This document shows positions 1-38,553 of a DNA stretch of 64,000 nucleotides, piece by piece (positions within the stretch are counted from its first letter, which is position 1; every line of letters starts with the position of its first letter). The DNA lies in IMG/VR virus record IMGVR_UViG_3300021520_000002, positions 1 to 64,000 of that record. One strand, written 5' to 3'. The notes beneath the pieces are model-generated. The model was not told the origin of the DNA. It worked only from the letters and a program-made list of their open reading frames with translations, and searched no databases. The position numbers and the translations under genes were made by a program.

Positions 1-1080
1 GGAACCGCTGGAAGTTCTGGAACAAGTGGTAGTAGTGGAACGTCAGGAGCAGCTGGAGCGCCAGGTACATCTGGAACTTCAGGTTCTGATGGAACAAGTG
101 GAACTTCAGGTTCTGATGGAACCTCTGGAAGTTCTGGAACAAGTGGTAGTAGTGGAACGTCAGGAGCAGCTGGAGCGCCAGGTACAAGTGGAAGTTCAGG
201 AACTTCTGGAAGTTCTGGAACAAGTGGAACTGCAGGTACTTCAGGATCTTCAGGTACATCAGGAAGTTCTGGAACATCTGGTAGTAGTGGAACATCAGGA
301 ACAAGTGGGTCGAGTGGTACATCAGGAAGTTCAGGAACATCAGGAAGTTCAGGTACGAGTGGAGCAGCAGGTACTTCAGGGTCTTCAGGAACATCTGGAA
401 GTTCTGGAACAAGTGGAGCAGCAGGTACTTCAGGGTCTTCAGGAACATCTGGAAGTTCAGGTACGAGTGGAGCAGCAGGTACTTCAGGGTCTTCAGGAAC
501 GAGTGGATCTAGTGGAACATCAGCTCTTAATGGATTACCTTCTGGTGGAACTGATGCACAAGTATTAGCTAAAATAGATGGAACAAATTATAATGTACAA
601 TGGGTAGATCAAACAGGTGGTACTGGAGGAACTGGAACATCTGGTACAAGTGGAACATCTTCTACTGTTGGTGCATATTTACACACTCAGGGTACAGCTG
701 GCACTAGTTGGACTGCATCTCATAATCTTGGTACTAAATATTTGAATATTATGGCTTTTGATAGTACTGATTATGTTGTTATACCAAATTCTGTAATAGG
801 TACAGATGTTAATACAATGGTACTTGATTTTGGTACATCATCAATTTCTGGAAAAGCTTATTTTTCAATTGGTGGAGGAACAAGTGGTAGTTCAGGTTCT
901 TCTGGAACATCTGGAAGTTCAGGTAGTAGTGGAACAAGTGGTTTAGATGGTACTGGTGGAGTTCCTGCTGGTGGTAATACATTTGATATATTAATGAAAA
1001 ATTCAACTAGTGCTTATGATGTTGCATGGAAAGAAGGTGTAACAAAAAGCCAAGCTATAGCGTATGCTATAGTGTTTTAG
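1..1080 (+). CDS. 5'-truncated Gly/Ser/Thr-repeat (G-x-x) virion fibre protein
   Basis: Frame 1 is open from base 1 (GTAGSSGTSGSSGTS...) to TAG at 1078-1080. The track's 742..1080 ORF is only its C-terminus. It has two copies of a phage-fibre-type motif (LPSGGTDAQVLAKIDGTNYNVQW / VPAGGNTFDILMKNSTSAYDVAW). Confidence 0.75.
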   Translation, partial: GTAGSSGTSGSSGTSGAAGAPGTSGTSGSDGTSGTSGSDGTSGSSGTSGSSGTSGAAGAPGTSGSSGTSGSSGTSGTAGTSGSSGTSGSSGTSGSSGTSGTSGSSGTSGSSGTSGSSGTSGAAGTSGSSGTSGSSGTSGAAGTSGSSGTSGSSGTSGAAGTSGSSGTSGSSGTSALNGLPSGGTDAQVLAKIDGTNYNVQWVDQTGGTGGTGTSGTSGTSSTVGAYLHTQGTAGTSWTASHNLGTKYLNIMAFDSTDYVVIPNSVIGTDVNTMVLDFGTSSISGKAYFSIGGGTSGSSGSSGTSGSSGSSGTSGLDGTGGVPAGGNTFDILMKNSTSAYDVAWKEGVTKSQAIAYAIVF

Positions 1081-1088
1081 AAAATATT

Positions 1089-1126
1089 ATATCGGCAAGA
1101 TCTTGTAATATAGATCTTGCCGATAT
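1089..1126. terminator. Hairpin built from paired TTGCCGAT motifs (15-bp perfect stem)
   Basis: ATATCGGCAAGATCT, 8-nt loop, AGATCTTGCCGATAT; intergenic, just after a stop codon. Confidence 0.7.
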
Positions 1127-1154
1127 TAAAAAGTTATAGTTTTTGGGGAGTGAT

Positions 1155-1544
1155 ATGAAAAGGATAATAACTGATTATAATTTTGTAGCATCAACAAAGA
1201 AAATAACATTTCCATTAGAAACAGGTTTTACTATAGATGGTCTTCTTTTAATTACAAATGTTACAGACAATATTATTATTTATAATTTTGCAGATCCTTT
1301 AACTGGGGCATCTGTAGATATAAGTGGTCTTATTATTACTCTTACATATAATACAACATCAATGAGTGATACTGATCATCTTTTAATTTATCATGATGAT
1401 GGATTACCTGCTGTTAATCAAATAACTGGTGAGAAAGGACGAGAAGCAAGTGAAGTAACTAGTAAAGAACAAATGGATATGTTTACTGATATATTAGAAG
1501 AATTGAGAGAGATTAAACTTATTTTAGCATCTAGTTTTGGATAA
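1155..1544 (+). CDS. Hypothetical virion-associated protein
   Basis: ATG at 1155 after GGGGAG. The LLLITNVTDNIIIYNFAD...LTYNTTSMSDTDHLLIY segment is typical of phage structural proteins. Confidence 0.55.
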   Translation: MKRIITDYNFVASTKKITFPLETGFTIDGLLLITNVTDNIIIYNFADPLTGASVDISGLIITLTYNTTSMSDTDHLLIYHDDGLPAVNQITGEKGREASEVTSKEQMDMFTDILEELREIKLILASSFG

Positions 1545-1562
1545 AAAGGAGGAAATGAGAAT

Positions 1563-2234: not shown

Positions 2235-2251
2235 AGATGAGGTAGGAAACT

Positions 2252-2911: not shown

Positions 2912-2928
2912 AGATGAGGTAGGAAACT

Positions 2929-3603: not shown

Positions 3604-3618
3604 GTGAGGTATAAAAAC

Positions 3619-4281: not shown

Positions 4282-4294
4282 GTGAGGAAAGAAC

Positions 4295-5176: not shown

Positions 5177-5548
5177 ATGGCTGCTACTACATATACAAAA
5201 AATCATTTATCTAATTCAACAGATGGTAAAGGTATAAAAGTTGCTGGAACATCATCTGGGGGAGCAACAGATATTCATACTGCAAGTACTGCAAGTACTA
5301 CAACTGATTTTGATGAAGTATGGATATGGTGTGTTAATACATCTGCAAGCGCAATAAAACTTACAATAATGTGGGGTGGTACTGGTGATCCAGATGATTT
5401 TATTGAATATACAGTAGCTCCTGAAGATGGGTTAAAATGTATCATACCAGGATTAGTACTACAACATAGTTTAGCTATAAAAGCGTTTGCCGGTACAACT
5501 AATTTACTTGTTATACATGGTTTTGTTAATAGTATGGTTACAGCATAA
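5177..5548 (+). CDS. Hypothetical phage structural protein
   Basis: AAGGAGG RBS; beta-rich; DEVWIW...LTIxWGG...PGLVL...VIHGFVN pattern. Confidence 0.55.
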   Translation: MAATTYTKNHLSNSTDGKGIKVAGTSSGGATDIHTASTASTTTDFDEVWIWCVNTSASAIKLTIMWGGTGDPDDFIEYTVAPEDGLKCIIPGLVLQHSLAIKAFAGTTNLLVIHGFVNSMVTA

Positions 5549-14147: not shown

Positions 14148-15839
14148 ATGATAAGAGAAATAAAAATAGATTTTTTAGAAAGAGTGAGAGTTGAAATTCT
14201 TGGAGAACCAGATGGTAATAAATATTTGGTAGAATTTATTAATCAAGATACTAGAATATTAGAATATTCAAGAGAGATGTATATTAATAATTGGGCAGTT
14301 TATATTAAATCATATTTTGTTAATTGGTTAATAAGAGTTACTGGACCAAATTATAAATATGAATATAAATATGATTGTACTGATAAAAAAGTAGTTGTTT
14401 ATTTTTCAGGTACAGGATTAGGTGATGCAATTGCTTGGTTACCAGCTTGTGTGGAATTTGTTAAGAAACATAATTGTAATTTATATGTTATGACAAATTG
14501 GGCAAAATTATTTAGTAAAGTTTATCCTGAAATCAACTTTGTAAATTTTGCCGATACAACAAATGAATATGCTCGATATAGAATTAATCTTTATCATAAT
14601 GATAAGAATAGAAATCACCAACCAAATGATTGGAGAACAATTCCTTTACAACAAATATCATCTGATATTCTTGGAATAGAATATAAAGAATCTGCTCCTA
14701 AAATAGATGTTAGTAATATAAAAACTTCTATGGTAAAAAGACCAAAAAAATATGTTTGTATATCTGAACATACTGCTTTAGGTTATTGTAAGTTATGGCA
14801 TTATCCAGGAGGATGGCAAGAAGTTGTTGATTATTTAATATCTAAAGATTATGAGGTTGTTGTTATAAGTACAGAACCAACTAAATTAGTTAATGTAATT
14901 GATATGACAAACAATTCTATTGAAGTTACTATGGGATTGTTAATGAATTGTGAGTTTTATATTGGAGTAGCATCTGGTTTAGCTTGGTTATCATGGACTT
15001 TAGGTAAGAGAGTTATTATGTTTTCTGGATTCAGTTTACCGTGGTGTGAGTTTCAAACAAACAACTATAGAATTTCTGGTGTAGGAAATTGTGTAGGTTG
15101 TTTACATGATGTATTTATCGACACATCCAGGTGGAACTCAAACTGTCCCAGAAACCAAGATAACACTTGTACTAAACAAATAACACCAAAGATGGTAACT
15201 AATATGATTGATAGATTGGTTCCATCAATAAACATTCCAATAAGTTCATTTCAAGGAGATTATGTGTTTGAAACTACAAAGGCAAATAAAAGAAGACAAA
15301 AGATAGAATTATTTCATAGAATTTTTAAAGGAAAAGGAATTGATATTGGTGCTGGTCAAGATAATGTAAATAAAGATAATATTTTTAAAGATGTTGAGTA
15401 TTGTGAGAGTTTTGATGTTGGACATGGAGATGCTCAATATATAAATTCTTATAAGCCAGAAAATTTTTATGATTTTGTACATAGTTCACATTGTTTAGAA
15501 CATATGGTTGATCCTTTTGAAGCTATTAAAAATTGGTTTTCTTTAGTTAAACCAGGTGGTTATTTAGTAGTTACAGTTCCAGATGAAGATTTATATGAAC
15601 AAGGATATTGGCCATCAAAGTTTTCAACATGTCACAATTGGACTATGACAATTAATAAAGAAAAATCATGGAGTCCAAAATCAGTTAATGTTTTAGGACT
15701 AATTCAATCTCTTGAAAAATATGAAATTATTAAAATTGAATTAGTTGATGTGAATTATAATTATTCTTTAAAGAATTTCGATCAATGTTTAAATGAAGCA
15801 GAATGTTGTGTTGAATTTATAATTCGTAAAAAAGAATAA
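14148..15839 (+). CDS. Aah/TibC-like (BAHT, GT9-related) glycosyltransferase fused to a C-terminal SAM methyltransferase
   Basis: GLGDAIAWLP, KLWHYPGGWQ, YIGVASGLAWLSW, SGFSLPWCEF, CxxC...CP...CT iron-finger cysteines; then IDIGAG...HSSHCLEH...KPGG. Confidence 0.75.
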   Translation: MIREIKIDFLERVRVEILGEPDGNKYLVEFINQDTRILEYSREMYINNWAVYIKSYFVNWLIRVTGPNYKYEYKYDCTDKKVVVYFSGTGLGDAIAWLPACVEFVKKHNCNLYVMTNWAKLFSKVYPEINFVNFADTTNEYARYRINLYHNDKNRNHQPNDWRTIPLQQISSDILGIEYKESAPKIDVSNIKTSMVKRPKKYVCISEHTALGYCKLWHYPGGWQEVVDYLISKDYEVVVISTEPTKLVNVIDMTNNSIEVTMGLLMNCEFYIGVASGLAWLSWTLGKRVIMFSGFSLPWCEFQTNNYRISGVGNCVGCLHDVFIDTSRWNSNCPRNQDNTCTKQITPKMVTNMIDRLVPSINIPISSFQGDYVFETTKANKRRQKIELFHRIFKGKGIDIGAGQDNVNKDNIFKDVEYCESFDVGHGDAQYINSYKPENFYDFVHSSHCLEHMVDPFEAIKNWFSLVKPGGYLVVTVPDEDLYEQGYWPSKFSTCHNWTMTINKEKSWSPKSVNVLGLIQSLEKYEIIKIELVDVNYNYSLKNFDQCLNEAECCVEFIIRKKE

Positions 15840-24400: not shown

Positions 24401-25276
24401 ATCTTTGAACATTTATATAATGCAAAAGGTAAAAGAGTTCTGATAACGGTTGATAGTAAAGCTATGGGTGATACTGTGGCTTGGGTACCTTATCTTGAAG
24501 AATTTAGAAAGAAACATGAATGTCAACTTATTGTAACAACTTTTTGGAATAAACTTTATAAAGACATGTATCCAGAAATCGAATTTCACGAACCTGGTGA
24601 AGGATTAAGAGATTTATATGCTCAGTATGTTGTTGGTGTTTTTGATGATGATTATAATCGTAATAAGATTCATTGGAGATCTATACCGTTACAAAAAGTA
24701 GCATCAGATTTACTTGGTTTAGAGTATAAAGAAATTAAACCAAGAATTTTAATTAAACCAGAAGAGAAAAGAGAAATTAAACAAAAATATGTTGTATTAT
24801 CTCAGCATAGTACTTTTCAATGTAAGTTTTGGTTATATCCAAATGGTTGGCAACGTATAGTTGATTATTTAAGTGGTTTAGGATATAAAGTTGCAATAGT
24901 TTCTTTACAAAAACCATTAGAAGTTAAAAATGTAATTGATTGTACTGGTAGAGATATATTTGATAGTATTAATATTATTAAAAATGCTGAATTTTTTATA
25001 GGTATTAGTTCTGGTCCAACTTGGTTAGCTTGGGCATTAGATATTCCAACTATTTTAATTTCAGGATATAGTTCTGAATGGGCAGAAATGCAAGAAACAG
25101 ATACAGCTATTAGAGTTATAAATAAAAATGTTTGTAATAGTTGTTGGCAAGATTCAAGTCAACCAATTGATAGAGGAAAATGGGATTGGTGTCCTAGAGA
25201 TAAGAGAATGGAGTGTACAACACAAATAACTCCGAAAATGGTAATTGATGCAATAGAAAAAATTAGAATCAAGTAA
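21461..25276 (+). CDS. Four-domain enzyme: GT4-type glycosyltransferase + SAM methyltransferase + unknown domain + Aah/TibC-like (BAHT) glycosyltransferase
   Basis: GT4: TGYAHH, GRWDNRK, AEGWNIPLIQA. MTase: LNLGSG, SHSLEH, RVLKPNG. BAHT: AMGDTVAWVPY, KFWLYPNGWQ, FIGISSGPTWLAWAL, CNSCW...WCP...ECT. Confidence 0.8.
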   Translation: MFDLVLGNSSYLGHTGYAHHSREFFTRLSRRVPVRIRNFAYVESLDYLTQEQKDLVIHQTWNQPPYEVGKPFERNPKDKIVNIVLNETNHFYFYDKYEGPKIAYNVWESTIQPFGFFNKLLEYDQLWVPTKWQRDCSIGQGFPAARVKIVPEGIDGTKFCPGDSDISLTQLRKDEFNFTLIGRWDNRKSTTEIIRAFLNEFKEDEPVNLYLHVDNPWGEKIDGFKTTEERMKHYGFDPEYKRFVLIRGLERVENDDLYINYLRNANCFISCAKAEGWNIPLIQAICCGTPTISSNYGAQLDFADQVSHLVNIKRYVKPYKVFMQDDNTPGVVAEPDYEHLQQVMRDVYNNYKEYKEIALNDSITIREKFDWEKAVDKAMPALEELYQRYYPPRVRLNLGSGNFIKDGYINIDEFVESEDIRKMSMLSLDFADNSVDEVYTSHSLEHFGKDGVNQVLKECNRVLKPNGIIVIEVPNLESVLQHWLNTKEEDRWGFPLDTIFGMQTTPGEYHKTGFTKQRLSEVVKQAGFEVDEIKDIDSHAQECILLTAHKINIRENSVVIVDCYPDNELKQNLLIKQIQYLKQFGMPILLTTHYSGLSKEIIELVDYVVYDKRNIMSEDSLGYFFVQEKFIKVKSVISKKYHSLTVHMNLKNALTFCRNKFKYAHFIEYDVNVDFSRHLEVVEKSLLESKFCAYSYDEEMENLKKVSQNKDISGIVTNLLSFNVDWLDDNFINIDNWNSYKQIAYASSIKNHKFADLIYENWLYDYFKAGDLFKNIKLFDRDLKNEIIKERSVVSSEMFDNKIVFLTSETDQHEVILFVINHFSDHEVDYKFICNDHTSEGKIPTNGLAYYVANKIDKVRVIIDGRVEDLSFDFAKLYAETRFKFGDDRFKCFVWTDDDDDGFTPGREKKVADVRFHYVDGAFVELLGKSSDEKLFEVEFSDQDENKKLYSTRLSPNMWSKSDYKYFINWKTLVKYKNDVIFEHLYNAKGKRVLITVDSKAMGDTVAWVPYLEEFRKKHECQLIVTTFWNKLYKDMYPEIEFHEPGEGLRDLYAQYVVGVFDDDYNRNKIHWRSIPLQKVASDLLGLEYKEIKPRILIKPEEKREIKQKYVVLSQHSTFQCKFWLYPNGWQRIVDYLSGLGYKVAIVSLQKPLEVKNVIDCTGRDIFDSINIIKNAEFFIGISSGPTWLAWALDIPTILISGYSSEWAEMQETDTAIRVINKNVCNSCWQDSSQPIDRGKWDWCPRDKRMECTTQITPKMVIDAIEKIRIK

Positions 25277-29124: not shown

Positions 29125-30006
29125 ATGGATGACGAAAGAATTTATATTGGACGAGGAATGGGTACAAGTGGAACATCAGGAATAGGTGTAAGTGGTTCTA
29201 GTGGAACATCTGGAACAACACCCCCTGGATTAACTTCAGGTACAGATGGAACAAGTGGTTCGAGTGGAACAACAGGAAGTTCAGGTACAAGTGGTTCAAG
29301 TGGAACGTCTGGGTCTGGCACTTCGGGTAGTTCTGGAACATCTGGTGTAGCTGGAACATCTGGAACAACCCCTCCTGGATTAACTTCAGGAACAGATGGA
29401 ACAAGTGGTTCTAATGGCACATCAGGTTCTTCTGGAACAAGTGGAGCAGCTGGTACTGCTGGATCAAGTGGAACAAGTGGTGTAAATGGAACATCTGGAA
29501 CAACCCCTCCTGGATTAACTTCAGGTACAGATGGTACTTCTGGAACTTCTGGTGTAGATGGAACAAGTGGAACTTCTGGTGTATCTGGTTCAAGTGGAAC
29601 TTCTGGTGTATCTGGTTCAAGTGGAACATCAGGAAGTTCAGGAACAACTGGTTCATCTGGAACATCTGGAACATCAGGTTCTGGAACAAGTGGAACATCT
29701 GTAGCTTTTAGTTTAAATTATTTTGATTATAATCAAACAGTTACTGATGACGGTTCATTTGATCTTCCAGCAATTACTAATATTGGTAATGGTTGGATTG
29801 TGGCTGGTCAGAATCAGGAAAGAAGTTGGTTTATAGTTGGACCTGTTGGAACAGTTACTTTGATAAATAATACAACTAATGTTGTTGCTGGTGAAGATAC
29901 TAATAATAAATTATGTATTGGAACTGCAGTAGTTCAAGAACCCGTAACTATTAAAAATCGTTTAGGTTCATCAATGAATGTAATGTTACAGATGTGGTAT
30001 GATTAA
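29125..30006 (+). CDS. Gly/Ser/Thr-repeat fibre protein
   Basis: About 180 aa of G-x-x repeats with three TTPPGLTSGTDG kinks, then a globular C-terminus. Confidence 0.7.
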   Translation: MDDERIYIGRGMGTSGTSGIGVSGSSGTSGTTPPGLTSGTDGTSGSSGTTGSSGTSGSSGTSGSGTSGSSGTSGVAGTSGTTPPGLTSGTDGTSGSNGTSGSSGTSGAAGTAGSSGTSGVNGTSGTTPPGLTSGTDGTSGTSGVDGTSGTSGVSGSSGTSGVSGSSGTSGSSGTTGSSGTSGTSGSGTSGTSVAFSLNYFDYNQTVTDDGSFDLPAITNIGNGWIVAGQNQERSWFIVGPVGTVTLINNTTNVVAGEDTNNKLCIGTAVVQEPVTIKNRLGSSMNVMLQMWYD

Positions 30007-30041: not shown

Positions 30042-31286
30042 ATGAATTTACCACCTTATGGAGATGATAGTAAGAGAAATTTTGCTCATTTTGGTACTCT
30101 TAAAGTAAGCTCACAAGACATACCAAATATGACTATAAAAATATCACCTGGTGGGTTCTGGTATTATACAAGTACTGGACCAATTTATGTTGAATTTGCT
30201 GGTGGTAATTCACCAACAATAACTAAACCGGGTACTAATGCTAAATGGGTAATAATAGCACTAAATTCTAGTGCTCAAATTGTTTTAATTGATGGTTCGA
30301 TTAGTGCACATCCTCAGGTACCAACAATTCCTAGAGGAAGAGTAATTCTTGCCGCTGTTTATGTTCAATCATCAACAACAGAAATTACTAATGATATGAT
30401 TTTTGATACAAGAGCATTGTTTGCTCAGTTTCCAACAGATCATAGAGATTTAGCTGGAACAACTGAAACTGGTTCACATCCAGTTTCATCGATTTCTGGA
30501 TTACAAACTATTTTAGATGATTTAGTTACAGAAGAAGACTTAACTACAGGTTTAGCAACAAAAGCAAATCAAACTGGTACTAATGAGTCTTCTTTTATTT
30601 TAAATGAAGATTTTCTTGGTACTCCTGCTTCTGATGTTAGTTTAATGGTTGAAAGAGGTAGTGAGAGTAATGTTGGTATAAAGTGGAATGAAACTTTAGA
30701 TCAATGGCAAGTAACTTCAGATGGTAGTATATGGAATACATTTGGTTCTGTTTCTACTAGTGGTGTGTCTGGTAGTTCAGGTACATCTGGCACAAGTGGA
30801 AGTGGCACAAGTGGAACTTCAGGTTCTGGAACAAGTGGTTCAAGTGGAACCTCTGGAATAGCTGGTTCTTCAGGAACTTCTGGAGCAGATGGAACTTCAG
30901 GTTCTTCAGGAACATCTGGAATAAATGGTTCTTCAGGCACTTCTGGTGTATCAGGTAGTAGTGGAACTTCTGGAAGTTCAGGTTTATCAGGTTCTGATGG
31001 AACAAGTGGGTCGAGTGGGTCGAATGGAACTTCAGGTTCTTCAGGTACATCAGGAGTAGATGGAACATCAGGTTCTTCAGGAACTTCTGGAGCAGATGGA
31101 ACAGCTGGTAGTTCTGGAACAAGTGGAGCAGATGGAACTTCAGGTTCTTCAGGAACGAGTGGAACATCTGGAACTGGTTGGAGTGGAACATGTTATGTTG
31201 GTAATACTTCAGGCACTTCAGCAGAACTTAATTATTATTTAACAATTAGTAATGGGATAGTTACTAATTTTGTTGGACCAGTGTAA
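30042..31286 (+). CDS. MNxPPYG-domain fibre paralog 1 with GST repeats
   Basis: Shared N-terminal domain; ERG...W...W module; GST repeats. Confidence 0.7.
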   Translation: MNLPPYGDDSKRNFAHFGTLKVSSQDIPNMTIKISPGGFWYYTSTGPIYVEFAGGNSPTITKPGTNAKWVIIALNSSAQIVLIDGSISAHPQVPTIPRGRVILAAVYVQSSTTEITNDMIFDTRALFAQFPTDHRDLAGTTETGSHPVSSISGLQTILDDLVTEEDLTTGLATKANQTGTNESSFILNEDFLGTPASDVSLMVERGSESNVGIKWNETLDQWQVTSDGSIWNTFGSVSTSGVSGSSGTSGTSGSGTSGTSGSGTSGSSGTSGIAGSSGTSGADGTSGSSGTSGINGSSGTSGVSGSSGTSGSSGLSGSDGTSGSSGSNGTSGSSGTSGVDGTSGSSGTSGADGTAGSSGTSGADGTSGSSGTSGTSGTGWSGTCYVGNTSGTSAELNYYLTISNGIVTNFVGPV

Positions 31287-31360: not shown

Positions 31361-34021
31361 ATGAATGTGCCGCCCTATGGAAATGATTTAAAAAATGCAT
31401 TTGCTCATTTTGGTGTTCTTAGAGTGACTGCTCAAGATCCACCAAATATGACCGTGAAAATTTCACCAGGTGGATTTTGGTATTATGTAAGTACTGGACC
31501 TGTTTATGTTGAATTTGCCGGTGGAGATTCACCAATAATAACAACATCTATGGATAATTCATATTGGGTTTTAATTACAATAAGTCCAGAAGGTTTAATA
31601 ATTTTAGTTGAAGGAGAACATGCGGTAGAACCTGTGTTGCCTTATGTTCCTCGAGGAAGAGTAATTCTTGCCGCTATTTATGTTCAATTTGATATACATA
31701 CAATTACTGATGATATGATTTTTGATACGAGAACACTGTTCACTCAATATCCAACGGATCATAGAGATTTAACCGGAACATCTGAAATTAATATACATTC
31801 AATTTCATCAATTTCTGGATTACAAACAGCTCTTAATGATAAAGTAGATGTTGATGATTTAAGTGTTTTATTATTAACTAAAGCTGATATATTTGGTACT
31901 CCTAATATTGTTTTTAAATTTAATCAAGATTTTACCGGCACACCAACTGATAATATTATATTAGAAGTTGAAAGAGGAACGGAATCAAATGCTGCTATAA
32001 GATGGAATGAAACATCAAAAATGTGGGAACATTCAAAAGATAGTATTATTTGGCAAGGTATTGGAACATCTGGTGTTTCTGGAACATCAGGAACAAGCGG
32101 TACATCAGCAAGTTCTGGAACATCTGGAACAACTGGAACCTCGGGTTCTAGTGGAACATCAGCAACTGGTGGATCTTCTGGAACAAGTGGAACTTCATTT
32201 TATGGAGTAACATCTGGAACCTCTGGAAGTGCAGGAACATCAGGTAGTTCAAGTACATCTGGAACATCTGGAAGTGCAGGAACATCTGGAAGTTCTGGAA
32301 CATCTGGAAGTTCTGGAACATCAGGTTCATCTGGTAGTTCTGGTTCATCAGGAAGTTCAGGTAGTAGTGGAACATCACCTCCTGGATTCACTTCTGGAAC
32401 ATCAGGAAGTTCTGGAACATCAGGAAGTTCTGGAACAAGTGGATCGGGTGGTACTTCTGGTAGTTCTAGTACAAGTGGTTCATCAGGAACATCTGGAAGT
32501 TCTGGTTCAAGTGGAAGTTCTGGAATATCTGGGAGTTCTGGATCATCAGGAAGATCTGGAACAAGTGGGTCGAGTGGTACAGCTGGTAGTTCTGGTACAA
32601 GTGGAAGTGCAGGAACTTCAGGTTCTGATGGTACTTCTGGAAGTTCTGGTACAAGTGGGTCGAGTGGAACATCAGGAAGTTCTGGTTCAAGTGGTTCTGA
32701 TGGAACATCTGGTAGTTCTGGTTTTGATGGTACCTCAGGATCTTCTGGAACAAGTGGGTCGAGTGGAAGTTCAGGTTCAAGTGGAAGTTCTGGTTCTTCT
32801 GGAACATCTGGAAGCTCTGGTACAAGTGGTAGTAGTGGAACATCAGGGAGCTCTGGAAGTTCAGGTTCTTCAGGCACAAGTGGTGATGGTTTTTATTGGG
32901 TTGGTGCTTGGACACTTACTGATCATTATGATATAGATGATATAGTTGAAAATGATGGTAATTCATATGTTTGTAAATTAGCAAATACTGCAGATGCAAA
33001 TAATGAACCAGGTGTTGGTGGAAGTTGGGCAACATATTGGGATTTATTTACACAAGGTGGTACAGGAACATCTGGTACTTCAGGTAGTTCTGGAACAAGT
33101 GGGTCAAGTGGAACAACAGGTAGTTCTGGAACAAGTGGGTCGAGTGGAACAACAGGTAGTTCTGGAACAAGTGGAAGTAGTGGTACATCTGGAAGTTCAA
33201 GTACAAGTGGTAGTAGTGGAACATCTGGAACTTCAGGTTCTGATGGTACCTCTGGAAGTTCTGGTACAAGTGGATCGAGTGGAACATCTGGGTCTTCAGG
33301 TACTGCTGGAAGTTCTGGTACATCCCCTCCTGGTTTAACATCAGGTACAGATGGAACATCAGGAAGTTCTGGTACAAGTGGAAGTAGTGGAACATCAGGA
33401 AGTTCTGGTACAAGTGGTATAGATGGTACATCTGGAAGTTCTGGAACAAGTGGATCGAGTGGCACATCTGGAAGTTCTGGAACAAGTGGATCATCTGGTA
33501 GTTCTGGTTCTTCTGGAACAAGTGGTATAAATGGAACGTCTGGGTCTTCAGGTACTGCTGGTAGTTCTGGAACATCCCCTCCTGGTTTAACATCAGGTAC
33601 TGATGGCACATCAGGTAGTTCTGGTACAAGCGGAAGTAGTGGTACATCAGGAAGTTCTGGAACTTCAGGTTCTGGAACAAGTGGGTCTTCAGGTGATGGA
33701 ACATTATCAGTATATACAAAAGGAACAAGTGGTACATTATCAGCTGATGAAGTTAAAGGAACGCTTATAAAAATAACAGCAGCTATAACTTTAACATTAC
33801 CTGCTGGTTCTTCAGGATATAATTCAATTTTTTATAGTAGTACCTCTGCTGCTGTATCAGTAGATCCAAACAGTAGTGAAGTTATGGTTTTAAATGGGGT
33901 ACCTTTAACTGGTGGATATAAAGTTACAAGTCCTGGAACAAGAGGAGATACATTAACTGTTGCTCATGATGGAACTAACTGGCTTTGTTTAGGTGCAAGT
34001 AACTGGACTAGTGGAGGATAA
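31361..34021 (+). CDS. MNxPPYG-domain fibre paralog 2 with long GST repeats and an internal CBM5/12-like module
   Basis: Two GST tracts flank WVGAW...YDIDDIVENDGNSYVC...PG...YWDL. Confidence 0.7.
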   Translation: MNVPPYGNDLKNAFAHFGVLRVTAQDPPNMTVKISPGGFWYYVSTGPVYVEFAGGDSPIITTSMDNSYWVLITISPEGLIILVEGEHAVEPVLPYVPRGRVILAAIYVQFDIHTITDDMIFDTRTLFTQYPTDHRDLTGTSEINIHSISSISGLQTALNDKVDVDDLSVLLLTKADIFGTPNIVFKFNQDFTGTPTDNIILEVERGTESNAAIRWNETSKMWEHSKDSIIWQGIGTSGVSGTSGTSGTSASSGTSGTTGTSGSSGTSATGGSSGTSGTSFYGVTSGTSGSAGTSGSSSTSGTSGSAGTSGSSGTSGSSGTSGSSGSSGSSGSSGSSGTSPPGFTSGTSGSSGTSGSSGTSGSGGTSGSSSTSGSSGTSGSSGSSGSSGISGSSGSSGRSGTSGSSGTAGSSGTSGSAGTSGSDGTSGSSGTSGSSGTSGSSGSSGSDGTSGSSGFDGTSGSSGTSGSSGSSGSSGSSGSSGTSGSSGTSGSSGTSGSSGSSGSSGTSGDGFYWVGAWTLTDHYDIDDIVENDGNSYVCKLANTADANNEPGVGGSWATYWDLFTQGGTGTSGTSGSSGTSGSSGTTGSSGTSGSSGTTGSSGTSGSSGTSGSSSTSGSSGTSGTSGSDGTSGSSGTSGSSGTSGSSGTAGSSGTSPPGLTSGTDGTSGSSGTSGSSGTSGSSGTSGIDGTSGSSGTSGSSGTSGSSGTSGSSGSSGSSGTSGINGTSGSSGTAGSSGTSPPGLTSGTDGTSGSSGTSGSSGTSGSSGTSGSGTSGSSGDGTLSVYTKGTSGTLSADEVKGTLIKITAAITLTLPAGSSGYNSIFYSSTSAAVSVDPNSSEVMVLNGVPLTGGYKVTSPGTRGDTLTVAHDGTNWLCLGASNWTSGG

Positions 34022-34024
34022 AAT

Positions 34025-34435: not shown

Positions 34436-34444
34436 AAATGTTTG

Positions 34445-34476: not shown

Positions 34477-34508
34477 AATTAATTGGTATTTAATAGGAGG
34501 TAATTTTA

Positions 34509-36839
34509 ATGAATGTACCACCTTATGGAAATAATTATAAAAAAATGGGTGCATATTTTTCAAACTTACAGGTAACATCTAGATCTACACCTGATATGAC
34601 AGTAAAAGTTTTACCAGGTGGTTTTTGGAGACATACGGTCAATGGACCAGTTTATGTTGAATGTGTTGGAGGTTATTCAACAACAATCACAGCACCTGTT
34701 AGTTATTCAAAATGGGTAATGATTACTCTTAATGAAAGTGGACAAATTGTTCTTTTAGATGGGGCATCTGCTAGCAATCCAGATTTACCAACTGTTCCAC
34801 GTGGTAGGATGACTTTAGCTGTTATTCGTATAAATTCAACAACAACTGAAATCAATGATGATATGATTTATGATCTTAGACCTTTGTTTGCACAGTATCC
34901 AACAGATTATCGGGATTTAACTGCTCCTGATGAGTCTACTTATAATCCAACTTCAGGATCGTCAGGAAGTTCTGGAACATCAGGTAGATCAGGAACGAGT
35001 GGATATTCTGGATTAAGTGGCACATCTGGTAGTTCTGGTTCTTCTGGAACATCTGGAAGCTCTGGTACAAGTGGGTCGAGTGGAACATCAGGTTCTTCAG
35101 GAACATCAGGTTCTTCTGGAACAAGTGGTTCAAGTGGTTCTTCAGGAAGTTCAGGTACATCTGGAAGTTCAAGTACATCAGGTTCTTCAGGAACATCAGG
35201 TTCTTCTGGAACAAGCGGAAGTTCTGGTTCAAGTGGTTCTGATGGTACTTCAGGAAGTTCAGGAACATCAGGTTCTTCAAGTACATCAGGAAGTTCTGGA
35301 ACAAGTGGAACATCAGGTTCTTCAGGTTCTTCAGGTTCTGATGGAACAAGTGGTTCTTCTGGAACGAGTGGGTCGAGTGGTACATCTGGAAGTTCTGGAA
35401 CAAGTGGAAGTAGTGGAACTTCAGGTTCTGATGGTACTTCAGGTAGTTCTGGAACAAGTGGAAGTAGTGGAACTTCAGGAACAGATGGAACAAGTGGTTC
35501 TAGTGGAACATCAGGTTCTTCAGGAACAAGTGGTATAGATGGTTCTTCAGGAACAAGTGGAAGTTCAAGCACATCTGGAAGTTCTGGAACAAGTGGAACA
35601 GATGGAACAAGTGGTACAGATGGAACAAGCGGTTCTAGTGGAACATCAGGAAGTTCTGGAACAAGTGGTTCATCAGGCACTTCAGGGTCAAGTGGACTTG
35701 CTGGTGGAACTTCTGGATATTTAGCTGTTTGGTCTGGAGATGATTCGATAGAGAATTCGGGAATATTTAGAAGTGTTGAAAAATATTTTATAGGTACTAG
35801 TGGTATTAATACAAAATTAACTATTGGTTTAACTATTAATCAAGATAATAGTGATGATGAAATAATTTCTTTAAAATCATCTGATGTTTCTCATGCAATG
35901 ACTGGTGTTACTGAAACTGATACATATGGATGTTTTGGTAAAAGTGTTCATGATAAAGGAGGTTTATCAGTTCAAGGTTTTACTGAAAGTATTATTGGAC
36001 TTACTCTTTATGGATATGCAGCTACATCTGCAACAAATGCATCTCAAGCACCAATAGTACTTAATGCTTATGAAACTGGTACTAGAGGATGGTTTAATGC
36101 AACAGATAATCTTATTTTATTTATAAATGGTGGTAGTGCAGCTAGTAGAATTATGGGAGATGGTAGTTATTTTATCAATGAAAGCATCAATACAAAACAA
36201 AATATGGGTATTACAATTAATCAATATACTTATGATACTGAATATATTTCTCTTAAACAAAATTTTACTCATGGAATGTCAAATATTACAGAAACTGATA
36301 CATATGGAATTATGAGAGAAGTTTTGATAGACCATGGTGGATTAGATATTAAAGGTTTATCAGATCAAATTAAAGGTGTTCAAATTAATGGATATGCTGG
36401 CACATCTGGCACATCTACTGCAACAACATCCGAATCTACTATTTATGTTAATGCTTATTTAAAAAATAGTACTACTTCAGGTTCTCATGGAACTGATGCT
36501 AATTTATTTGCTGTTGCAAATAATAGTGATGTTCAATTTATAGTTAAAGGAAATGGTGATATATTTTATAATGGTACATCTGGAACACCATTTGATGATT
36601 ATCAAGATGCTTTAGCGTGTCAAGATCTTTCTTATAACTTAAGTAGTGAATATGGTAAAATACTCATGTATAATAAAGAACAATTTGTTCAAATGGGTGT
36701 TATGACTGAAGATGGATTTGTTAGTAGAAAGAATATGGATATGTTACAGCTTGGTGCTGTAGGTGAATTATATCGAGTGTGTTTGACGTTATGTGATGAA
36801 CTTGGTATATCATTTGATGATGCTAAAAAAATGAATTAA
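34509..36839 (+). CDS. MNxPPYG-domain fibre paralog 3 with GST repeats and a duplicated C-terminal beta domain
   Basis: NTK..G.TINQ...D.E.ISLK...H.M...TETDTYG occurs twice. The C-terminal helical segment (FDDYQDAL...LQLGAVGELY) could be an intramolecular chaperone. Confidence 0.7.
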   Translation: MNVPPYGNNYKKMGAYFSNLQVTSRSTPDMTVKVLPGGFWRHTVNGPVYVECVGGYSTTITAPVSYSKWVMITLNESGQIVLLDGASASNPDLPTVPRGRMTLAVIRINSTTTEINDDMIYDLRPLFAQYPTDYRDLTAPDESTYNPTSGSSGSSGTSGRSGTSGYSGLSGTSGSSGSSGTSGSSGTSGSSGTSGSSGTSGSSGTSGSSGSSGSSGTSGSSSTSGSSGTSGSSGTSGSSGSSGSDGTSGSSGTSGSSSTSGSSGTSGTSGSSGSSGSDGTSGSSGTSGSSGTSGSSGTSGSSGTSGSDGTSGSSGTSGSSGTSGTDGTSGSSGTSGSSGTSGIDGSSGTSGSSSTSGSSGTSGTDGTSGTDGTSGSSGTSGSSGTSGSSGTSGSSGLAGGTSGYLAVWSGDDSIENSGIFRSVEKYFIGTSGINTKLTIGLTINQDNSDDEIISLKSSDVSHAMTGVTETDTYGCFGKSVHDKGGLSVQGFTESIIGLTLYGYAATSATNASQAPIVLNAYETGTRGWFNATDNLILFINGGSAASRIMGDGSYFINESINTKQNMGITINQYTYDTEYISLKQNFTHGMSNITETDTYGIMREVLIDHGGLDIKGLSDQIKGVQINGYAGTSGTSTATTSESTIYVNAYLKNSTTSGSHGTDANLFAVANNSDVQFIVKGNGDIFYNGTSGTPFDDYQDALACQDLSYNLSSEYGKILMYNKEQFVQMGVMTEDGFVSRKNMDMLQLGAVGELYRVCLTLCDELGISFDDAKKMN

Positions 36840-36846
36840 AAAGAAG

Positions 36847-36879
36847 ATCGGCAAGATTTAGAAATTAGATCTTGCCGAT
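36847..36879. terminator. Hairpin built from paired TTGCCGAT motifs
   Basis: ATCGGCAAGAT...ATCTTGCCGAT, intergenic. Confidence 0.65.
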
Positions 36880-36900
36880 AATTTAGTTGGAGGTAATTTA

Positions 36901-38553
36901 ATGAAGGTACCACCTTATGGAGATGATAACAAACGAATAGGTGCCTACTTTTCTAATTTACAAGTTAAGGCTCAAATTATACCAGATATGACCGTGTATA
37001 TCTCTTCTGGTGGATTCTGGTACTATACTAGTACTAGTCCAATTTATGTTGAATATGTTGGTGGTAGTTCACCTGAAATTAGTTGCCCTTTTGCTAATTC
37101 AAAATTTGTAGTAATAACAATTAGTGAAATGGGAGAAATTGTACTTATAGATGGGGATTCAAATGCTACACCAGTATTACCATCAATTCCACGTGGTAGA
37201 ATGATATTGGCAGTTGTTGAAATCAATTCGTCAACAATTAAAATAACAGATGATATGATTTTTGATACAAGAACTTTATTTGCTCAATTTCCAACTGATT
37301 ATAGAGATATATCTTCAGCGTTTTATGGTACTAATGGAACTTCTGGTACTTCTGGTTCATCAGGAAGTTCAGGTACTGGTGGAACTTCTGGTTCTTCAGG
37401 TAGAGCTGGATTTAGTGGTAGTAGTGGAACTAGTGGAACTTCTAGTACAAGTGGAAGTTCTGGAACATCTGGAACATCTGGAACATCTGGAACATCTGGA
37501 AGTAGTGGAACATCTGGATCATCTGGAACAAGTGGATTTGGAATAACTGGTACTGGTGGAACTTCAGGAAGTAGTGGAACATCAGGAACATCAGGTATTT
37601 CTTTTTATGGAGTAACATCTGGATCATCTGGAAGTTCTGGAACAAGTGGTAGTTCTAGTACTAGTGGAACTTCAGGAACTAGTGGAACTTCAGGAACTAG
37701 TGGAACTTCAGGAACATCTGGAACTTCAGGAACATCTGGAAGTAGCGGTTCTTCAGGAACATCAGCAACTAGTGTAACATCAGGTTCATCTGGAATAAGT
37801 GGTACAGCTGGTTCATCGGGAAGTTCTGGTTCAAGTGGATCGAGTGGAACAACAGGAAGTTCAGGTTCTAGTGGAACTTCAGCAACTTCTATAACTTCTG
37901 GAAGTAGTGGAACTTCGGGTAGTTCTGGTTCGAGTGGAAGTAGTGGAACATCTGGAAGTTCTGGAACAGGTGGATCTTCAGGTTCATCTGGAAGTTCAGG
38001 AACAGGTGGTTCATCTGGAAGTTCAGGAACAGGTGGTTCATCTGGAAGTTCAGGAACAGGTGGTTCATCTGGAAGTTCAGGAACAGGTGGTTCATCTGGA
38101 AGTTCTGGTTCTGATGGTAGTTCTGGATCAAGTGGTTCTTCTGGAAGTTCTGGATCTGGTGGGACATCTGGTTCATCTGGAACATCAGGTTCTAGTGGAC
38201 CTGCTGGAACAAGTGGATCGAGTGGAACATCTGCAACTTTAGGAACAAGTGGTGTTTTTGGAGCTTGGTCAACAGCTGGAGAATATGGAGCAGGAACTAG
38301 TTATCAAGCATCTGTTGATGGATTTGTACTTGTTCATCTTGCTGGGGGTGCTGGGGTATCATCTATTGGTTATACAGATTCTGCTGATCCACCAACAGTT
38401 ATAAGAGCAAGTGCTGGATGTGATGTTGTAAATGGAGGAGATTATAGTGTACATGTATATTATAATTCTTTTACCATGCCTGTTAAAAAAGGAGATTATT
38501 GGAAAGTTAGTGCTGCAACTCAATTATATTGGCTACCACTAATGAGTATTTAA
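36901..38553 (+). CDS. MNxPPYG-domain fibre paralog 4 with GST repeats
   Basis: Shared N-terminal domain; C-terminal YQASVDGFV...FTMPVKKGDYWKV domain. Confidence 0.7.
   Translation: MKVPPYGDDNKRIGAYFSNLQVKAQIIPDMTVYISSGGFWYYTSTSPIYVEYVGGSSPEISCPFANSKFVVITISEMGEIVLIDGDSNATPVLPSIPRGRMILAVVEINSSTIKITDDMIFDTRTLFAQFPTDYRDISSAFYGTNGTSGTSGSSGSSGTGGTSGSSGRAGFSGSSGTSGTSSTSGSSGTSGTSGTSGTSGSSGTSGSSGTSGFGITGTGGTSGSSGTSGTSGISFYGVTSGSSGSSGTSGSSSTSGTSGTSGTSGTSGTSGTSGTSGTSGSSGSSGTSATSVTSGSSGISGTAGSSGSSGSSGSSGTTGSSGSSGTSATSITSGSSGTSGSSGSSGSSGTSGSSGTGGSSGSSGSSGTGGSSGSSGTGGSSGSSGTGGSSGSSGTGGSSGSSGSDGSSGSSGSSGSSGSGGTSGSSGTSGSSGPAGTSGSSGTSATLGTSGVFGAWSTAGEYGAGTSYQASVDGFVLVHLAGGAGVSSIGYTDSADPPTVIRASAGCDVVNGGDYSVHVYYNSFTMPVKKGDYWKVSAATQLYWLPLMSI

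What the first reader, a model, noticed from the sequence alone, without database searches (positions are those of the whole stretch)
700..38310. GTS(G) peptide is implanted even in folded, non-repeat parts of virion proteins, suggesting a modification sequon
SEEN outside the low-complexity tracts: GTAGTSW and DFGTSS (first ORF), VAGTSSGG (5177), YYGTSAV x10 and GKSGTS in the His-repeat fibre (where sister repeats read YYTETE), GNTSGTSAE (30042), KGTSGTL (31361), FIGTSGI, YAGTSGTS and YNGTSGTP (34509), LGTSGV and GAGTSY (36901). INFERENCE: convergent acquisition of GTS in unrelated surface loops suggests an enzyme recognition site, such as a glycosylation acceptor, rather than slippage expansion alone.
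Basis: inference. Interest (0 to 1): 0.6.

Follow-up and report, generated by a model that had tools for sequence, protein, structure and literature searches.

The report
Serine-rich collagen fibres with phage heptosyltransferases
The scattered GTS peptides are mostly frayed ends, one amplified repeat unit and one-step variants of Ser/Thr-rich loops, so they do not look like an implanted sequon. The Gly-Thr-Ser/Gly-Ser-Ser collagen-like stalks they resemble do co-occur with phage-encoded TibC-type protein heptosyltransferases and are probably sugar-coated.

Summary
Every listed peptide is present. The window is the first 64 kb of a 285.6-kb jumbo phage.

"GTS" is the commonest Gly-X-Y triplet in Pro-free collagen-like stalks of nine fibre proteins. 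There are 1016 triplets: GTS 44%, GSS 35%, Ser at Y 82%.

Counts of GTS outside the tracts:
- **Tract-bearing fibres:** 14 observed against 5.2 expected (P=0.003). Beyond 30 residues from a tract it is 6 against 4.0.
- **21 tract-free proteins of the same modules:** 2 against 2.0.
- **Rest of the genome:** 9 against 12.2.
- **120 tract proteins of other phages:** 73 against 60.6±7.3.

"YYGTSAV x10" is one lineage-specific repeat unit amplified in tandem. The sites in ORFs 34509 and 5177 align with G/S/T-rich loops of tract-less homologs, one or two substitutions away. Convergent implantation is therefore not supported.

The glycosylation idea survives at tract level. The phage has two TIGR04414 (Aah/TibC) O-heptosyltransferase domains and a complete ADP-heptose pathway. 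In IMG/VR, 23 of 72 records sampled by a Gly-(Ser/Thr)-(Ser/Thr) repeat pattern carry this enzyme, against 0 of 66 controls. Among records at least 75% complete with GSS/GTS tracts, 6 of 7 carry it. No searched paper describes this link. Heptosylation itself is inferred, not shown.

The parts
1..1080 (+). C-terminal 359 aa of a collagen-like fibre of about 2030 aa. Its first 1671 aa are encoded at the other end of the record (G000 280559-285571). Tracts lie at nt 1-522 and 877-966. Isolated GTAGTSW is at 691-711 and DFGTSS at 826-843.
   Evidence: the ORF runs off the end of the record and continues at base 1. Pfam Collagen PF01391, E=5.6e-26.
5177..5548 (+). 123-aa protein of the virion module (phrog_30535) with a single GTS (VAGTSSGG, nt 5240-5263).
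   Evidence: The alignment with the Pseudanabaena phage PA-SR01 and Pam2 homologs and the EBPR podovirus 3 homolog shows NATTSGS / NTTSAIS at this position. None of those three records has a BAHT.
14148..15839 (+). BAHT copy 1: a TibC/Aah-type O-heptosyltransferase domain (residues 4-356) fused to a class I methyltransferase domain (residues about 392-487).
   Evidence: TibC 4rap, E=3.2e-35. TIGR04414, 215 bits against a cut-off of 200. Pfam Methyltransf_23 and Methyltransf_11.
21461..25276 (+). 1271-aa multidomain enzyme: GT4-type glycosyltransferase, methyltransferase, an unassigned middle region, and BAHT copy 2 (residues 911-1268). It ends 76 nt before the first fibre gene.
   Evidence: TIGR04414, 265 bits. 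37% identity to copy 1. An ortholog sits in the same position in the related contig L004.
25352..27970 (+). His-repeat (PTR, PF12789-type) fibre. The repeat array lies at about nt 26537-27556, with YYGTSAV x10, GKSGTS x5 and YYTE[TS] x7.
29125..30006 (+). 293-aa collagen-like protein. The tract spans residues 13-192 (nt 29161-29700).
   Evidence: The ortholog in L004 has a different tract length.
30042..31286 (+). Fibre paralog with the shared N-terminal domain. The tract is at nt 30762-31178. GNTSGTSAE lies 12 residues after the tract.
31361..34021 (+). Fibre paralog with two tract blocks (nt 32064-32890 and 33056-33676). KGTSGTL lies 16 residues after the last tract.
34509..36839 (+). Fibre paralog with a tract at nt 34956-35711, followed by a duplicated beta-rich unit and a helical C-terminal domain. 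Isolated FIGTSGI, YAGTSGTS and YNGTSGTP lie in this part.
36901..38553 (+). Fibre paralog with a tract at nt 37327-38232. LGTSGV lies 4 residues and GAGTSY 21 residues after the tract.
38626..39513 (+). Tract-less paralog with the same N-terminal domain and no GTS. It is 40% identical to Bacillus phage G gp255.

Best explanation
GTS is the commonest Gly-X-Y unit of Pro-free, Ser/Thr-rich collagen-like stalks, (GTS/GSS)n, in the tail-fibre paralogs of this jumbo phage. It is not a free-standing sequon.

The copies outside the tracts are a mixture of three things:
1. Degenerate tract ends and short GTSG-type linkers within about 30 residues of a tract.
2. One lineage-specific variant of a PTR repeat unit that was then amplified tenfold.
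3. Single-step variants of G/S/T-rich loops that tract-less homologs also have.

The glycosylation link is real but sits at the level of the tracts. The phage makes ADP-heptose with GmhA-HldC, HldA and GmhB. It encodes two TibC/Aah-type O-heptosyltransferase domains beside the fibre genes. These most likely heptosylate the many serines of the collagen-like stalks, chiefly the Y-position Ser, in the infected cell before assembly.

What is shown:
- the collagen periodicity and triplet composition;
- the enzyme family and its conserved catalytic and iron-finger residues;
- the sugar-nucleotide pathway;
- the co-occurrence across phages.

What is inferred:
- that the fibres are the substrate;
- that Ser is the acceptor;
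- that the sugar helps triple-helix stability, hydration or protection.
For: **Tracts**
- 1016 triplets: GTS 44%, GSS 35%, Y = Ser 82%, Pro at only 11 of 2032 X/Y positions.
- Pfam Collagen hits down to E=2.6e-32.
- PHROG hits to tail fibre and collagen-like minor tail families.

**Isolated GTS**
- The enrichment occurs only in tract proteins and decays with distance from a tract.
- There is none in 21 tract-free module proteins or in the rest of the genome.
- There is none in 120 tract proteins of other phages (73 against 60.6±7.3; beyond 30 residues from a tract, 44 against 42.7).

**Enzymes**
- TibC, E=3.2e-35.
- TIGR04414 is above its cut-off for both copies.
- The Asp110, Lys230, Trp305 and four-Cys equivalents are invariant in 35 phage BAHT domains.
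- HldA is above its cut-off. GmhB and the GmhA-HldC fusion match their families strongly.

**Co-occurrence**
- 17 of 27 loci fetched with the BAHT domain have a (GSS/GTS)n ORF within 10 kb, usually upstream and often cut by the contig start.
- 23 of 72 records fetched by a (Gly-S/T-S/T)x8 DNA pattern have a BAHT, against 0 of 66 controls (P=4.6e-8).
- Among records at least 75% complete with GSS/GTS tracts, 6 of 7 have a BAHT.
- None of 10 records with only GST, GTT, GDT or GAS tracts, or a spurious in-frame match to the pattern, has one.
- All 9 BAHT sequence clusters include a member with a tract in its locus.
- TibC modifies Ser, not Thr (PMC4358343). This fits the association with Gly-X-Ser tracts rather than Gly-X-Thr tracts.
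- The phage has no autotransporter beta-domain or AIDA repeat, so the canonical substrate is absent.
Against: - No direct evidence of modification exists.
- The co-occurrence could partly reflect shared ancestry or host range. The main control sample was drawn with a GC-rich pattern. The composition-matched internal control is small (0 of 13; P=0.006).
- One complete BAHT-positive record (G140, 319 kb) shows no Gly-X-[S/T] x8 pattern. Its BAHT lies 3 kb from a contig end.
- One 84%-complete tract-bearing record (G028) has no BAHT.
- Both window BAHT copies have T or S where TibC has the sugar-binding Arg286. The thumb hairpin region is about 9 residues shorter in the alignment.
- Known BAHTs act on beta-helix strand-loop-strand motifs, not on collagen.
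- Against the "fraying" account: near tracts only GTS is found, never GSS (8 against 0). YYGTSAV is also a genuine lineage-specific replacement of YYTE[TSA].
Confidence: 0.6

Rival explanations
1. GTS(G) is a portable acceptor motif for the phage's heptosyltransferases. It has been selected independently in exposed loops of several fibre proteins as well as in the tracts.
For: - GTS is 2.7-fold over expectation and GTSG 8-fold in the non-tract parts of the tract fibres.
- GSS is not enriched there, which simple tract decay would not predict.
- YYGTSAV and SGTSHTH replace the family consensus YYTE[TSA] and D[TS]GHxH only in this lineage.
- Exact GTS is absent at the homologous positions of the BAHT-less homologs.
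- Several sites follow hydrophobic strand-like residues and lie in predicted coil. This loosely recalls the TibA acceptor sites QNS*GG and NTS*AA (PMC4358343).
Against: - There is no excess beyond 30 residues from a tract (6 against 4.0).
- There is none in the 21 tract-free proteins of the same modules (2 against 2.0) or elsewhere in the genome.
- There is none in 120 tract proteins of other phages, many with a BAHT nearby.
- The Ser of GKSGTS varies among repeat copies.
- The sites were picked because they read GTS, and the independent events number only about 8-10.
- Published BAHT recognition works on the folded TibA beta-helix, and no linear sequon is described (PMC4358343).
Confidence: 0.2
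2. The heptosyltransferases have nothing to do with the fibres. They modify host envelope components or host proteins, for example to block superinfection or remodel receptors. The tracts are unglycosylated flexible collagen-like spacers produced by slippage, and every isolated GTS is composition and chance.
For: - Phage glycosyltransferases in tail-fibre hypervariable regions have been interpreted as host-surface modifiers (PMC7029224).
- Most BAHT-positive phage records lack their own gmhA (3 of 27).
- The canonical BAHT substrates are bacterial autotransporters (PMC4358343).
- There is no biochemical evidence here.
Against: - The association is specific and two-way, between BAHT and Gly-X-Ser collagen-like genes. 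It holds across 9 BAHT clusters and genome sizes from 66 to 548 kb.
- The genes are typically adjacent on the same strand.
- None of 66 controls and none of 13 records without GSS/GTS tracts carries a BAHT.
Confidence: 0.15

Closest known systems
Bacterial autotransporter heptosyltransferases (BAHT: TibC, Aah) acting on TibA and AIDA-I (PMC4358343)
   Same: - Same enzyme family by a curated model (TIGR04414 above its cut-off, twice).
- Catalytic Asp, Lys230, Trp305 and the four iron-finger cysteines are conserved.
- The donor pathway for ADP-heptose is encoded by the phage.
- Ser-rich, highly repetitive acceptor proteins fit a hyperglycosylating enzyme.
   Different: - Encoded by a phage, and fused to methyltransferase or GT4 domains.
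- There is no autotransporter or AIDA repeat in the genome.
- The presumed substrate is a collagen-like Gly-X-Ser stalk, not a beta-helix.
- The Arg286 equivalent is T or S in this phage.
- The thumb hairpin that builds the TibC dodecamer appears shortened.
Bacillus anthracis exosporium protein BclA (collagen-like GXT repeats, O-glycosylated on Thr). This comparison is from my own knowledge and was not checked here.
   Same: A prokaryotic, Pro-poor collagen-like filament whose hydroxy-amino-acid-rich triplets carry O-linked sugars.
   Different: BclA carries rhamnose-based oligosaccharides on Thr, added by unrelated enzymes. Here the sugar would be heptose on Ser, added by a GT9/BAHT enzyme, and the protein is a phage fibre.
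Collagen-like tail-fibre proteins of phages and prophages (for example the E. coli O157 prophage collagens, PMC3368898; PHROG 'collagen like minor tail')
   Same: Gly-X-Y tracts flanked by trimeric fibre domains. Tract length varies between relatives (window compared with L004).
   Different: Those described are typically Pro-, Gln- or charge-rich and are not linked to a dedicated glycosyltransferase. Here X/Y are almost only Thr/Ser, and a BAHT co-occurs.
Phage tail repeat (PTR, Pfam PF12789) His-x-His fibres
   Same: ORF 25352-27970 belongs to this very large family (2717 hits). It carries the canonical YYTE[TS]E...HxH units.
   Different: A sub-repeat reads YYGTSAV...GKSGT[SAG]HxH. Among 120 homologs this was seen only in this lineage.
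O-glycosylated virion proteins of mycobacteriophages and glycosylated collagen-like fibrils of giant viruses (PMC4691112 for the giant viruses; the mycobacteriophage case is from my own knowledge)
   Same: Virus-encoded glycosyltransferases that decorate the virus's own surface proteins.
   Different: Different enzyme families, sugars and acceptor types. None involves heptose or BAHT.

Membership tests
BAHT (Aah/TibC O-heptosyltransferase, TIGR04414) | Whole-domain similarity above the curated equivalog cut-off | tested here: met
   215 bits (ORF 14148, residues 4-356) and 265 bits (ORF 21461, residues 911-1268) against a cut-off of 200. TibC 4rap, E=3.2e-35 over 340 residues.
BAHT (Aah/TibC O-heptosyltransferase, TIGR04414) | Catalytic base Asp110 and sugar-binding Lys230 and Trp305 (PMC4358343) | tested here: met
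   The equivalents are conserved in both window copies. They are invariant in 35 phage BAHT domains.
BAHT (Aah/TibC O-heptosyltransferase, TIGR04414) | Sugar-binding Arg286 | tested here: not met
   By alignment the position is T in copy 1 and S in copy 2. It is R in 27 of the 35 phage domains. This rests on alignment only, so a shifted equivalent cannot be excluded.
BAHT (Aah/TibC O-heptosyltransferase, TIGR04414) | Four-cysteine iron finger (Cys339, 342, 358, 370) | tested here: met
   All four align with Cys in both copies and in all 35 phage domains. Iron binding itself was not tested.
BAHT (Aah/TibC O-heptosyltransferase, TIGR04414) | Beta-hairpin thumb that builds the dodecameric ring | tested here: inconclusive
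   The HMMER alignment to TibC has two gaps, about 9 residues in all, across the thumb region. No structure was predicted.
BAHT (Aah/TibC O-heptosyltransferase, TIGR04414) | Substrate is an autotransporter beta-helix passenger (strand-loop-strand motif) | tested here: not met
   There is no Autotransporter (PF03797) or AIDA (PF16168) match in the 285.6-kb phage record. A host substrate cannot be excluded.
BAHT (Aah/TibC O-heptosyltransferase, TIGR04414) | Transfers heptose from ADP-heptose to Ser | not testable with these tools
   Indirect evidence only. The phage encodes GmhB, HldA (348.6 bits against a cut-off of 345) and an HldC-GmhA fusion.
Collagen triple-helix repeat (PF01391) | Uninterrupted Gly at every third residue over tens of triplets, with a match to the Pfam model | tested here: met
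   There are 1016 triplets in 9 proteins, with runs of up to several hundred residues. PF01391 E-values range from 2.3e-16 to 2.6e-32.
Collagen triple-helix repeat (PF01391) | Forms a trimeric triple helix | not testable with these tools
   The Pro content is almost nil. Stability without modification is doubtful, but that is an inference.
   The excess occurs only in tract-bearing fibres and within about 30 residues of tracts. The counts are 2 against 2.0 in tract-free module proteins, 9 against 12.2 in the rest of the genome, and 73 against 60.6±7.3 in 120 tract proteins of other phages.
   Exact GTS is absent from the three BAHT-less homologs of ORF 5177. They have ATTS / TTSA at the same place. 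The BAHT status of the homologs of ORF 34509 and of the PTR fibre is unknown.
Phage tail repeat fibre (PTR, PF12789) | Tandem YYTExE...HxH units with similarity to family members | tested here: met
   2717 proteins at E<=1e-5, many precomputed as PF12789. There are 7 YYTE[TS] units in the window protein.

The most novel reading that the evidence does not exclude
Phage TibC-type enzymes define a new kind of glycosylated collagen. In this reading, O-heptosylation of the Y-position serines takes the place of hydroxyproline in stabilising Pro-free (Gly-Thr/Ser-Ser)n triple helices. That would explain why the two genes travel together. GTS(G) would then be a portable minimal acceptor that is also modified in strand-loop-strand loops of the fibre heads, such as YYGTSAV, FIGTSGI and VAGTSSGG.
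Probability: 0.2. Interest if true: 0.8.

Novelty: new variant of a known kind. Interest (0 to 1): 0.55.

Why it matters
**As stated**, a GTS sequon implanted in folded virion proteins is mostly not real and would not matter.

**What lies behind it** is more interesting. A protein-glycosylating enzyme family is known only as a virulence accessory of E. coli-type autotransporters. Here it turns up in many unrelated large phages, and nearly always together with Ser-rich collagen-like fibre genes.

If the fibres are heptosylated, three things would follow:
- It would be a new substrate class for BAHTs.
- It would be a new chemical solution for stabilising or shielding a Pro-free collagen helix.
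- It would be a widespread form of virion glycosylation, with consequences for host recognition, protease resistance and phage immunogenicity.

It is directly testable with one co-expression experiment in E. coli, which supplies ADP-heptose.

Tried and rejected
- **Codon usage.** I compared codons of isolated and in-tract GTS to detect DNA-level copying from tracts. This was uninformative, because tract and genome codon usage are the same.
- **Tract termini.** I asked whether GTS caps the tracts in this phage. The result was not significant (first triplet 5 of 12, last 3 of 12). In other phages GTS outnumbers GSS at tract starts (63:23) and ends (28:11), although the two are equally frequent overall.
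- **Structure of ORF 34509, residues 536-776.** The AlphaFold2 model had mean pLDDT 65 and pTM 0.41. It is too weak for solvent exposure. It only places YAGTSGTS and YNGTSGTP in coil or linker segments.
- **Complex prediction.** I submitted BAHT copy 2 with a tract segment of ORF 29125.
- **tblastn of the His-repeat region against cultured phages.** This gave only one weak hit.
- **Homologs in five large BAHT-positive genomes.** A search with the ORF 1-1080 C-terminal domain and with ORF 5177 found nothing usable.
- **gmhA in other BAHT-positive records.** Only 3 of 27 have it, so a phage-borne heptose pathway is not general.
- **Literature.** Eight searches found no paper linking BAHT, TibC or heptosylation with phage collagen-like proteins. 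This library is incomplete, so it is no proof of novelty.

Full report
**What the window is.** The window is bases 1-64000 of a 285,572-bp virus record (about 30% GC, CheckV completeness 95%). The last ORF of the record (280559-285571) runs off the end and continues as window 1-1080. The record is therefore circularly permuted, and the "first ORF" is the tail of a fibre of about 2030 aa.

**The tract-bearing proteins.** Window ORFs 30042, 31361, 34509 and 36901, and two more near the other end of the record (277175 and 280559), share an N-terminal domain of about 140 aa (MNVPPYGDD...). ORF 29125 also carries tracts but has its own short N-terminus. ORF 38626 has the shared domain and no tract.
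- The shared domain is 40% identical to Bacillus phage G gp255 and weakly matches a PHROG baseplate family.
- ORF 277175 matches many tail-fibre and "collagen like minor tail" PHROGs.

**What the GTS tracts are.** They are collagen-like Gly-X-Y repeats.
- Pfam Collagen hits reach E=2.6e-32.
- Across nine proteins there are 1016 triplets: GTS 44%, GSS 35%, GSD 4%.
- X is Thr 48% and Ser 41%. Y is Ser 82%. Pro occupies only 11 of 2032 X/Y positions.
- GTS is therefore simply the commonest triplet of a Pro-free, Ser/Thr-rich collagen-like stalk.
- ORF 264548 (2233 aa, CBM_5_12 motifs) also uses GTSGTSTS-type linkers with an 8-residue period. Their glycine spacing is not that of collagen.

**Checking the observation.** To test for excess, I masked the collagen-periodic and G/S/T-rich stretches and shuffled residues within each remaining segment.

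| Protein set | GTS observed | GTS expected |
|---|---|---|
| 10 tract-bearing fibres, non-tract parts (5971 aa) | 14 | 5.2 (P=0.003) |
| Same, excluding residues within 10 aa of a tract | 9 | 4.7 (P=0.06) |
| Same, excluding residues within 30 aa of a tract | 6 | 4.0 (P=0.2) |
| 21 tract-free proteins of the same modules (4453 aa, includes ORF 5177) | 2 | 2.0 |
| Remaining 363 ORFs (72,161 aa) | 9 | 12.2 |
| 120 tract proteins of other phages, non-tract parts (50,949 aa) | 73 | 60.6±7.3 |
| Same, excluding residues within 30 aa of a tract | 44 | 42.7 |

Other motifs in the non-tract parts of the tract-bearing fibres:
- GTSG is 5 against 0.6.
- The cyclic permutations are raised too (TSG 12, SGT 9).
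- GST 5, STG 4 and TGS 6 sit at expectation.

The excess is real but small, about 9 extra copies. It is confined to tract-bearing fibres, sits next to tracts, and is not general.

**The His-repeat fibre.** ORF 25352-27970 has 15 GTS against 0.9 expected. They come from two motifs of one unit, LYYGTSAVDTLLLGKSGT[S/A/G]H[T/N]H.
- The unit is amplified in tandem, with 78-91% DNA identity between copies.
- YYGTSAV occurs 10 times.
- The pre-His motif reads GKSGTS 5 times, GKSGTA 3 times, GKSGTG once and GKSSTS twice.
- "x10" is therefore one or two events, and the Ser of the second motif is not conserved.

The region belongs to the very large PTR family (2717 proteins at E<=1e-5). In the 120 best homologs, [LRK][YF][YF] is followed by TET (512), TES (288) or TEA (102). 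GTS follows only in P0024, the cluster representative of the window's own protein. Before HxH the usual triplets are DTG, DTS, PSS and NTG. The GTS-bearing sub-repeat is thus a genuine lineage-specific variant.

**The other "folded" sites compared with homologs.** The C-terminal part of ORF 34509 has 22 homologs, none of the 12 examined with a long collagen tract. In alignment A1:
- FIGTSGI lies on the consensus [YF]IGD[ST]AN.
- YAGTSGTS lies on a loop that is Thr/Ser-rich in every homolog (G.ATT.(D/N)TT). P0002 even reads GYLGTST in its first unit.
- YNGTSGTP lies on the linker Y(N/D)G(T/A)(G/D), which is YNGTG in P0003.

A low-confidence model (pLDDT 65) puts the last two sites in coil or linker segments.

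VAGTSSGG of ORF 5177 aligns with NATTSGS in Pseudanabaena phages PA-SR01 and Pam2, and with NTTSAIS in EBPR podovirus 3. None of these records has a BAHT.

Each isolated GTS is therefore one or two substitutions away from a G/S/T-rich loop that exists without tracts and without the enzyme. Exact GTS is not present in those homologs.

The other near-tract sites (LGTSGV, GNTSGTSAE, KGTSGTL, GAGTSY) lie 4-21 residues from a tract end. In the 64%-identical relative L004, the corresponding tail of the ORF 30042 ortholog is a different degenerate S/G/T stretch.

**An observation the fraying account does not fully explain.** Within 30 residues of tracts there are 8 isolated GTS and no GSS. In other phages, tract starts and ends also favour GTS over GSS (63:23 and 28:11), although the two are equally common overall. 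Tract borders therefore have a composition of their own. I have no explanation for this.

**The glycosylation machinery.**
- ORF 14148-15839 (residues 4-356) and the C-terminus of ORF 21461-25276 (residues 911-1268) score 215 and 265 bits on TIGR04414 (cut-off 200).
- Copy 1 matches TibC (4rap) at E=3.2e-35.
- The two copies are 37% identical to each other.
- From the TibC paper (PMC4358343), the family's hallmarks are the catalytic Asp110, the sugar-binding Thr226, Lys230, Arg286 and Trp305, a four-Cys iron finger, and a beta-hairpin thumb.
- The Asp, Lys, Trp and four Cys equivalents are invariant in 35 phage BAHT domains. The Arg286 equivalent is R in 27 of them, but T and S in the two window copies.
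- The thumb region is about 9 residues shorter in the alignment.
- Copy 1 is fused to a methyltransferase. Copy 2 is fused to a GT4 glycosyltransferase, a methyltransferase and an unassigned region.

Elsewhere the phage encodes GmhB, HldA (above its cut-off) and an HldC-GmhA fusion at about 111.9-115.6 kb. This is a complete route to ADP-heptose. The genome has no autotransporter beta-domain and no AIDA repeat.

**Co-occurrence across phages, starting from the enzyme.** I fetched 27 IMG/VR loci with the BAHT domain (33-40% identity).
- 17 have a (GSS/GTS)n collagen-like ORF within 10 kb, usually upstream on the same strand and often cut by the contig start.
- One more has the tract just outside the fetched flank.

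**Co-occurrence, starting from the tracts.** A DNA pattern for (Gly-[S/T]-[S/T])x8 hit more than 120 stretches. Of 72 distinct records behind 80 loci, 23 have a TIGR04414 match, although most are fragments under 40% complete. Sorted by tract type:

| Tract type in the record | Records | BAHT-positive |
|---|---|---|
| GSS/GTS-dominated | 58 | 22 |
| Same, at least 75% complete | 7 | 6 |
| Same, at least 60 kb | 18 | 13 |
| Other in-frame G-x-y runs (GST, GTT, GDT, GAS, or spurious GCS/GSC) | 11 | 1 |
| No in-frame tract | 3 | 0 |

The one positive among the "other" records (L045) also carries 86 GSS/GTS triplets.

**Controls.**
- 64 records sampled with a (GGNCCNNNN)x6 pattern, plus phage G and the record behind L005: 0 of 66 BAHT-positive. 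Fisher P=4.6e-8.
- Internal contrast, 23 of 59 against 0 of 13: P=0.006.
- The 35 BAHT domains form 9 clusters at 60% identity or more, and each cluster has a member with a tract in its locus.
- Positive genomes range from 66 to 548 kb.

**Exceptions.**
- G140 (319 kb, complete) is BAHT- and gmhA-positive but has no Gly-X-[S/T]x8 pattern. Its BAHT lies 3 kb from a contig end.
- G028 (84% complete) has tracts but no BAHT.
- Only 3 of 27 other BAHT-positive records carry gmhA.
- Phage G has the fibre N-terminal domain without a tract or any GTS (gp255), and it has no BAHT.

**Interpretation.** TibC modifies Ser, not Thr (PMC4358343). The enzyme associates with Gly-X-Ser tracts rather than Gly-X-Thr tracts. 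The most economical reading is that the phage BAHTs heptosylate the serines of the collagen-like stalks. That step is inferred, as nothing here shows a modified residue. The sugar may stabilise, hydrate or protect a Pro-free triple helix. That idea rests on analogy with glycosylated Thr in other collagens, which I recall from memory and did not check.

The isolated GTS copies may be modified in passing. The evidence does not show that they were selected for it.

**Literature.** Eight full-text searches found no paper linking BAHT, TibC or heptosylation with phage fibres or collagen-like proteins. A pelagimyophage study interprets glycosyltransferases in fibre regions as host-surface modifiers (PMC7029224). 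That is the main rival for the enzyme's role.

**Verdict.**
- Observation: partly confirmed.
- Interpretation: partly supported. It is wrong about implantation in folded domains, and probably right that GTS chemistry is tied to glycosylation.
- The underlying system is a new variant of known kinds: a BAHT enzyme with a collagen-like phage fibre as its presumed substrate.

Noticed in passing
window 7806-10565 (+): A 919-aa phage protein made almost entirely of PAS domains. There are six PAS_9 stretches (E=7.8e-55) and no recognisable output domain. A sensor-type protein inside a virion/fibre module is unusual.
   Followed up: partly
window 1563-4957 (+): Five tandem paralogs of about 220 aa (MLxKIAGRVRG...RWHEVQ). 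They have no Pfam or PHROG match and no GTS at all, and they sit between two fibre genes.
   Followed up: no
G000 111877-115569 (-), locus L035: A complete phage-borne ADP-heptose pathway: GmhB, HldA and an unusual HldC-GmhA fusion protein of 326 aa. Only 3 of 27 other BAHT-positive viral records carry gmhA.
   Followed up: partly
G000 264548-271249 (+), locus L036 548-7249: A 2233-aa protein with many CBM_5_12-like motifs (HTS...EPGVG..W..YW). It also has three C-terminal repeats of about 150 aa, separated by GTSGTSTS linkers with an 8-residue period. That spacing cannot form a collagen helix, so this is a second low-complexity context for GTS.
   Followed up: partly
window 18700-19170 (+) and 17477-18013 (+): A pyruvoyl-dependent arginine decarboxylase (PF01862, E=4.6e-39), conserved in the relative L004. 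There is also a LigD 3'-phosphoesterase domain protein.
   Followed up: no
window 19985-20959 (+) and residues about 550-900 of ORF 21461-25276: A 324-aa ORF resembles the unassigned middle region of the 1271-aa GT4-methyltransferase-BAHT enzyme. I judged this by eye, and it has no Pfam match. It may be a further, undescribed sugar-modifying domain.
   Followed up: no
tract borders in this phage and in loci L006-L157: At the starts and ends of (GSS/GTS)n tracts, GTS outnumbers GSS about 2.6 to 1 (63:23 and 28:11), although the two are equally frequent overall. In this phage, 8 isolated GTS and no GSS lie within 30 residues of tracts. This is unexplained.
   Followed up: partly
IMG/VR contigs behind L008, L009, L013-L020, L023, L024, L027-L029, L031, L032 and L007: Many viral contigs begin or end inside a (GSS/GTS)n gene. 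Assemblies break in these repeats, so tract genes and their neighbours are systematically under-represented in fragmentary records.
   Followed up: no
window 19188-19745 (+): An HNH_3 + AP2 homing-endonuclease-like ORF. A similar ORF sits between fibre genes in L004 (10616-11308) and another at G000 108866-109498.
   Followed up: no
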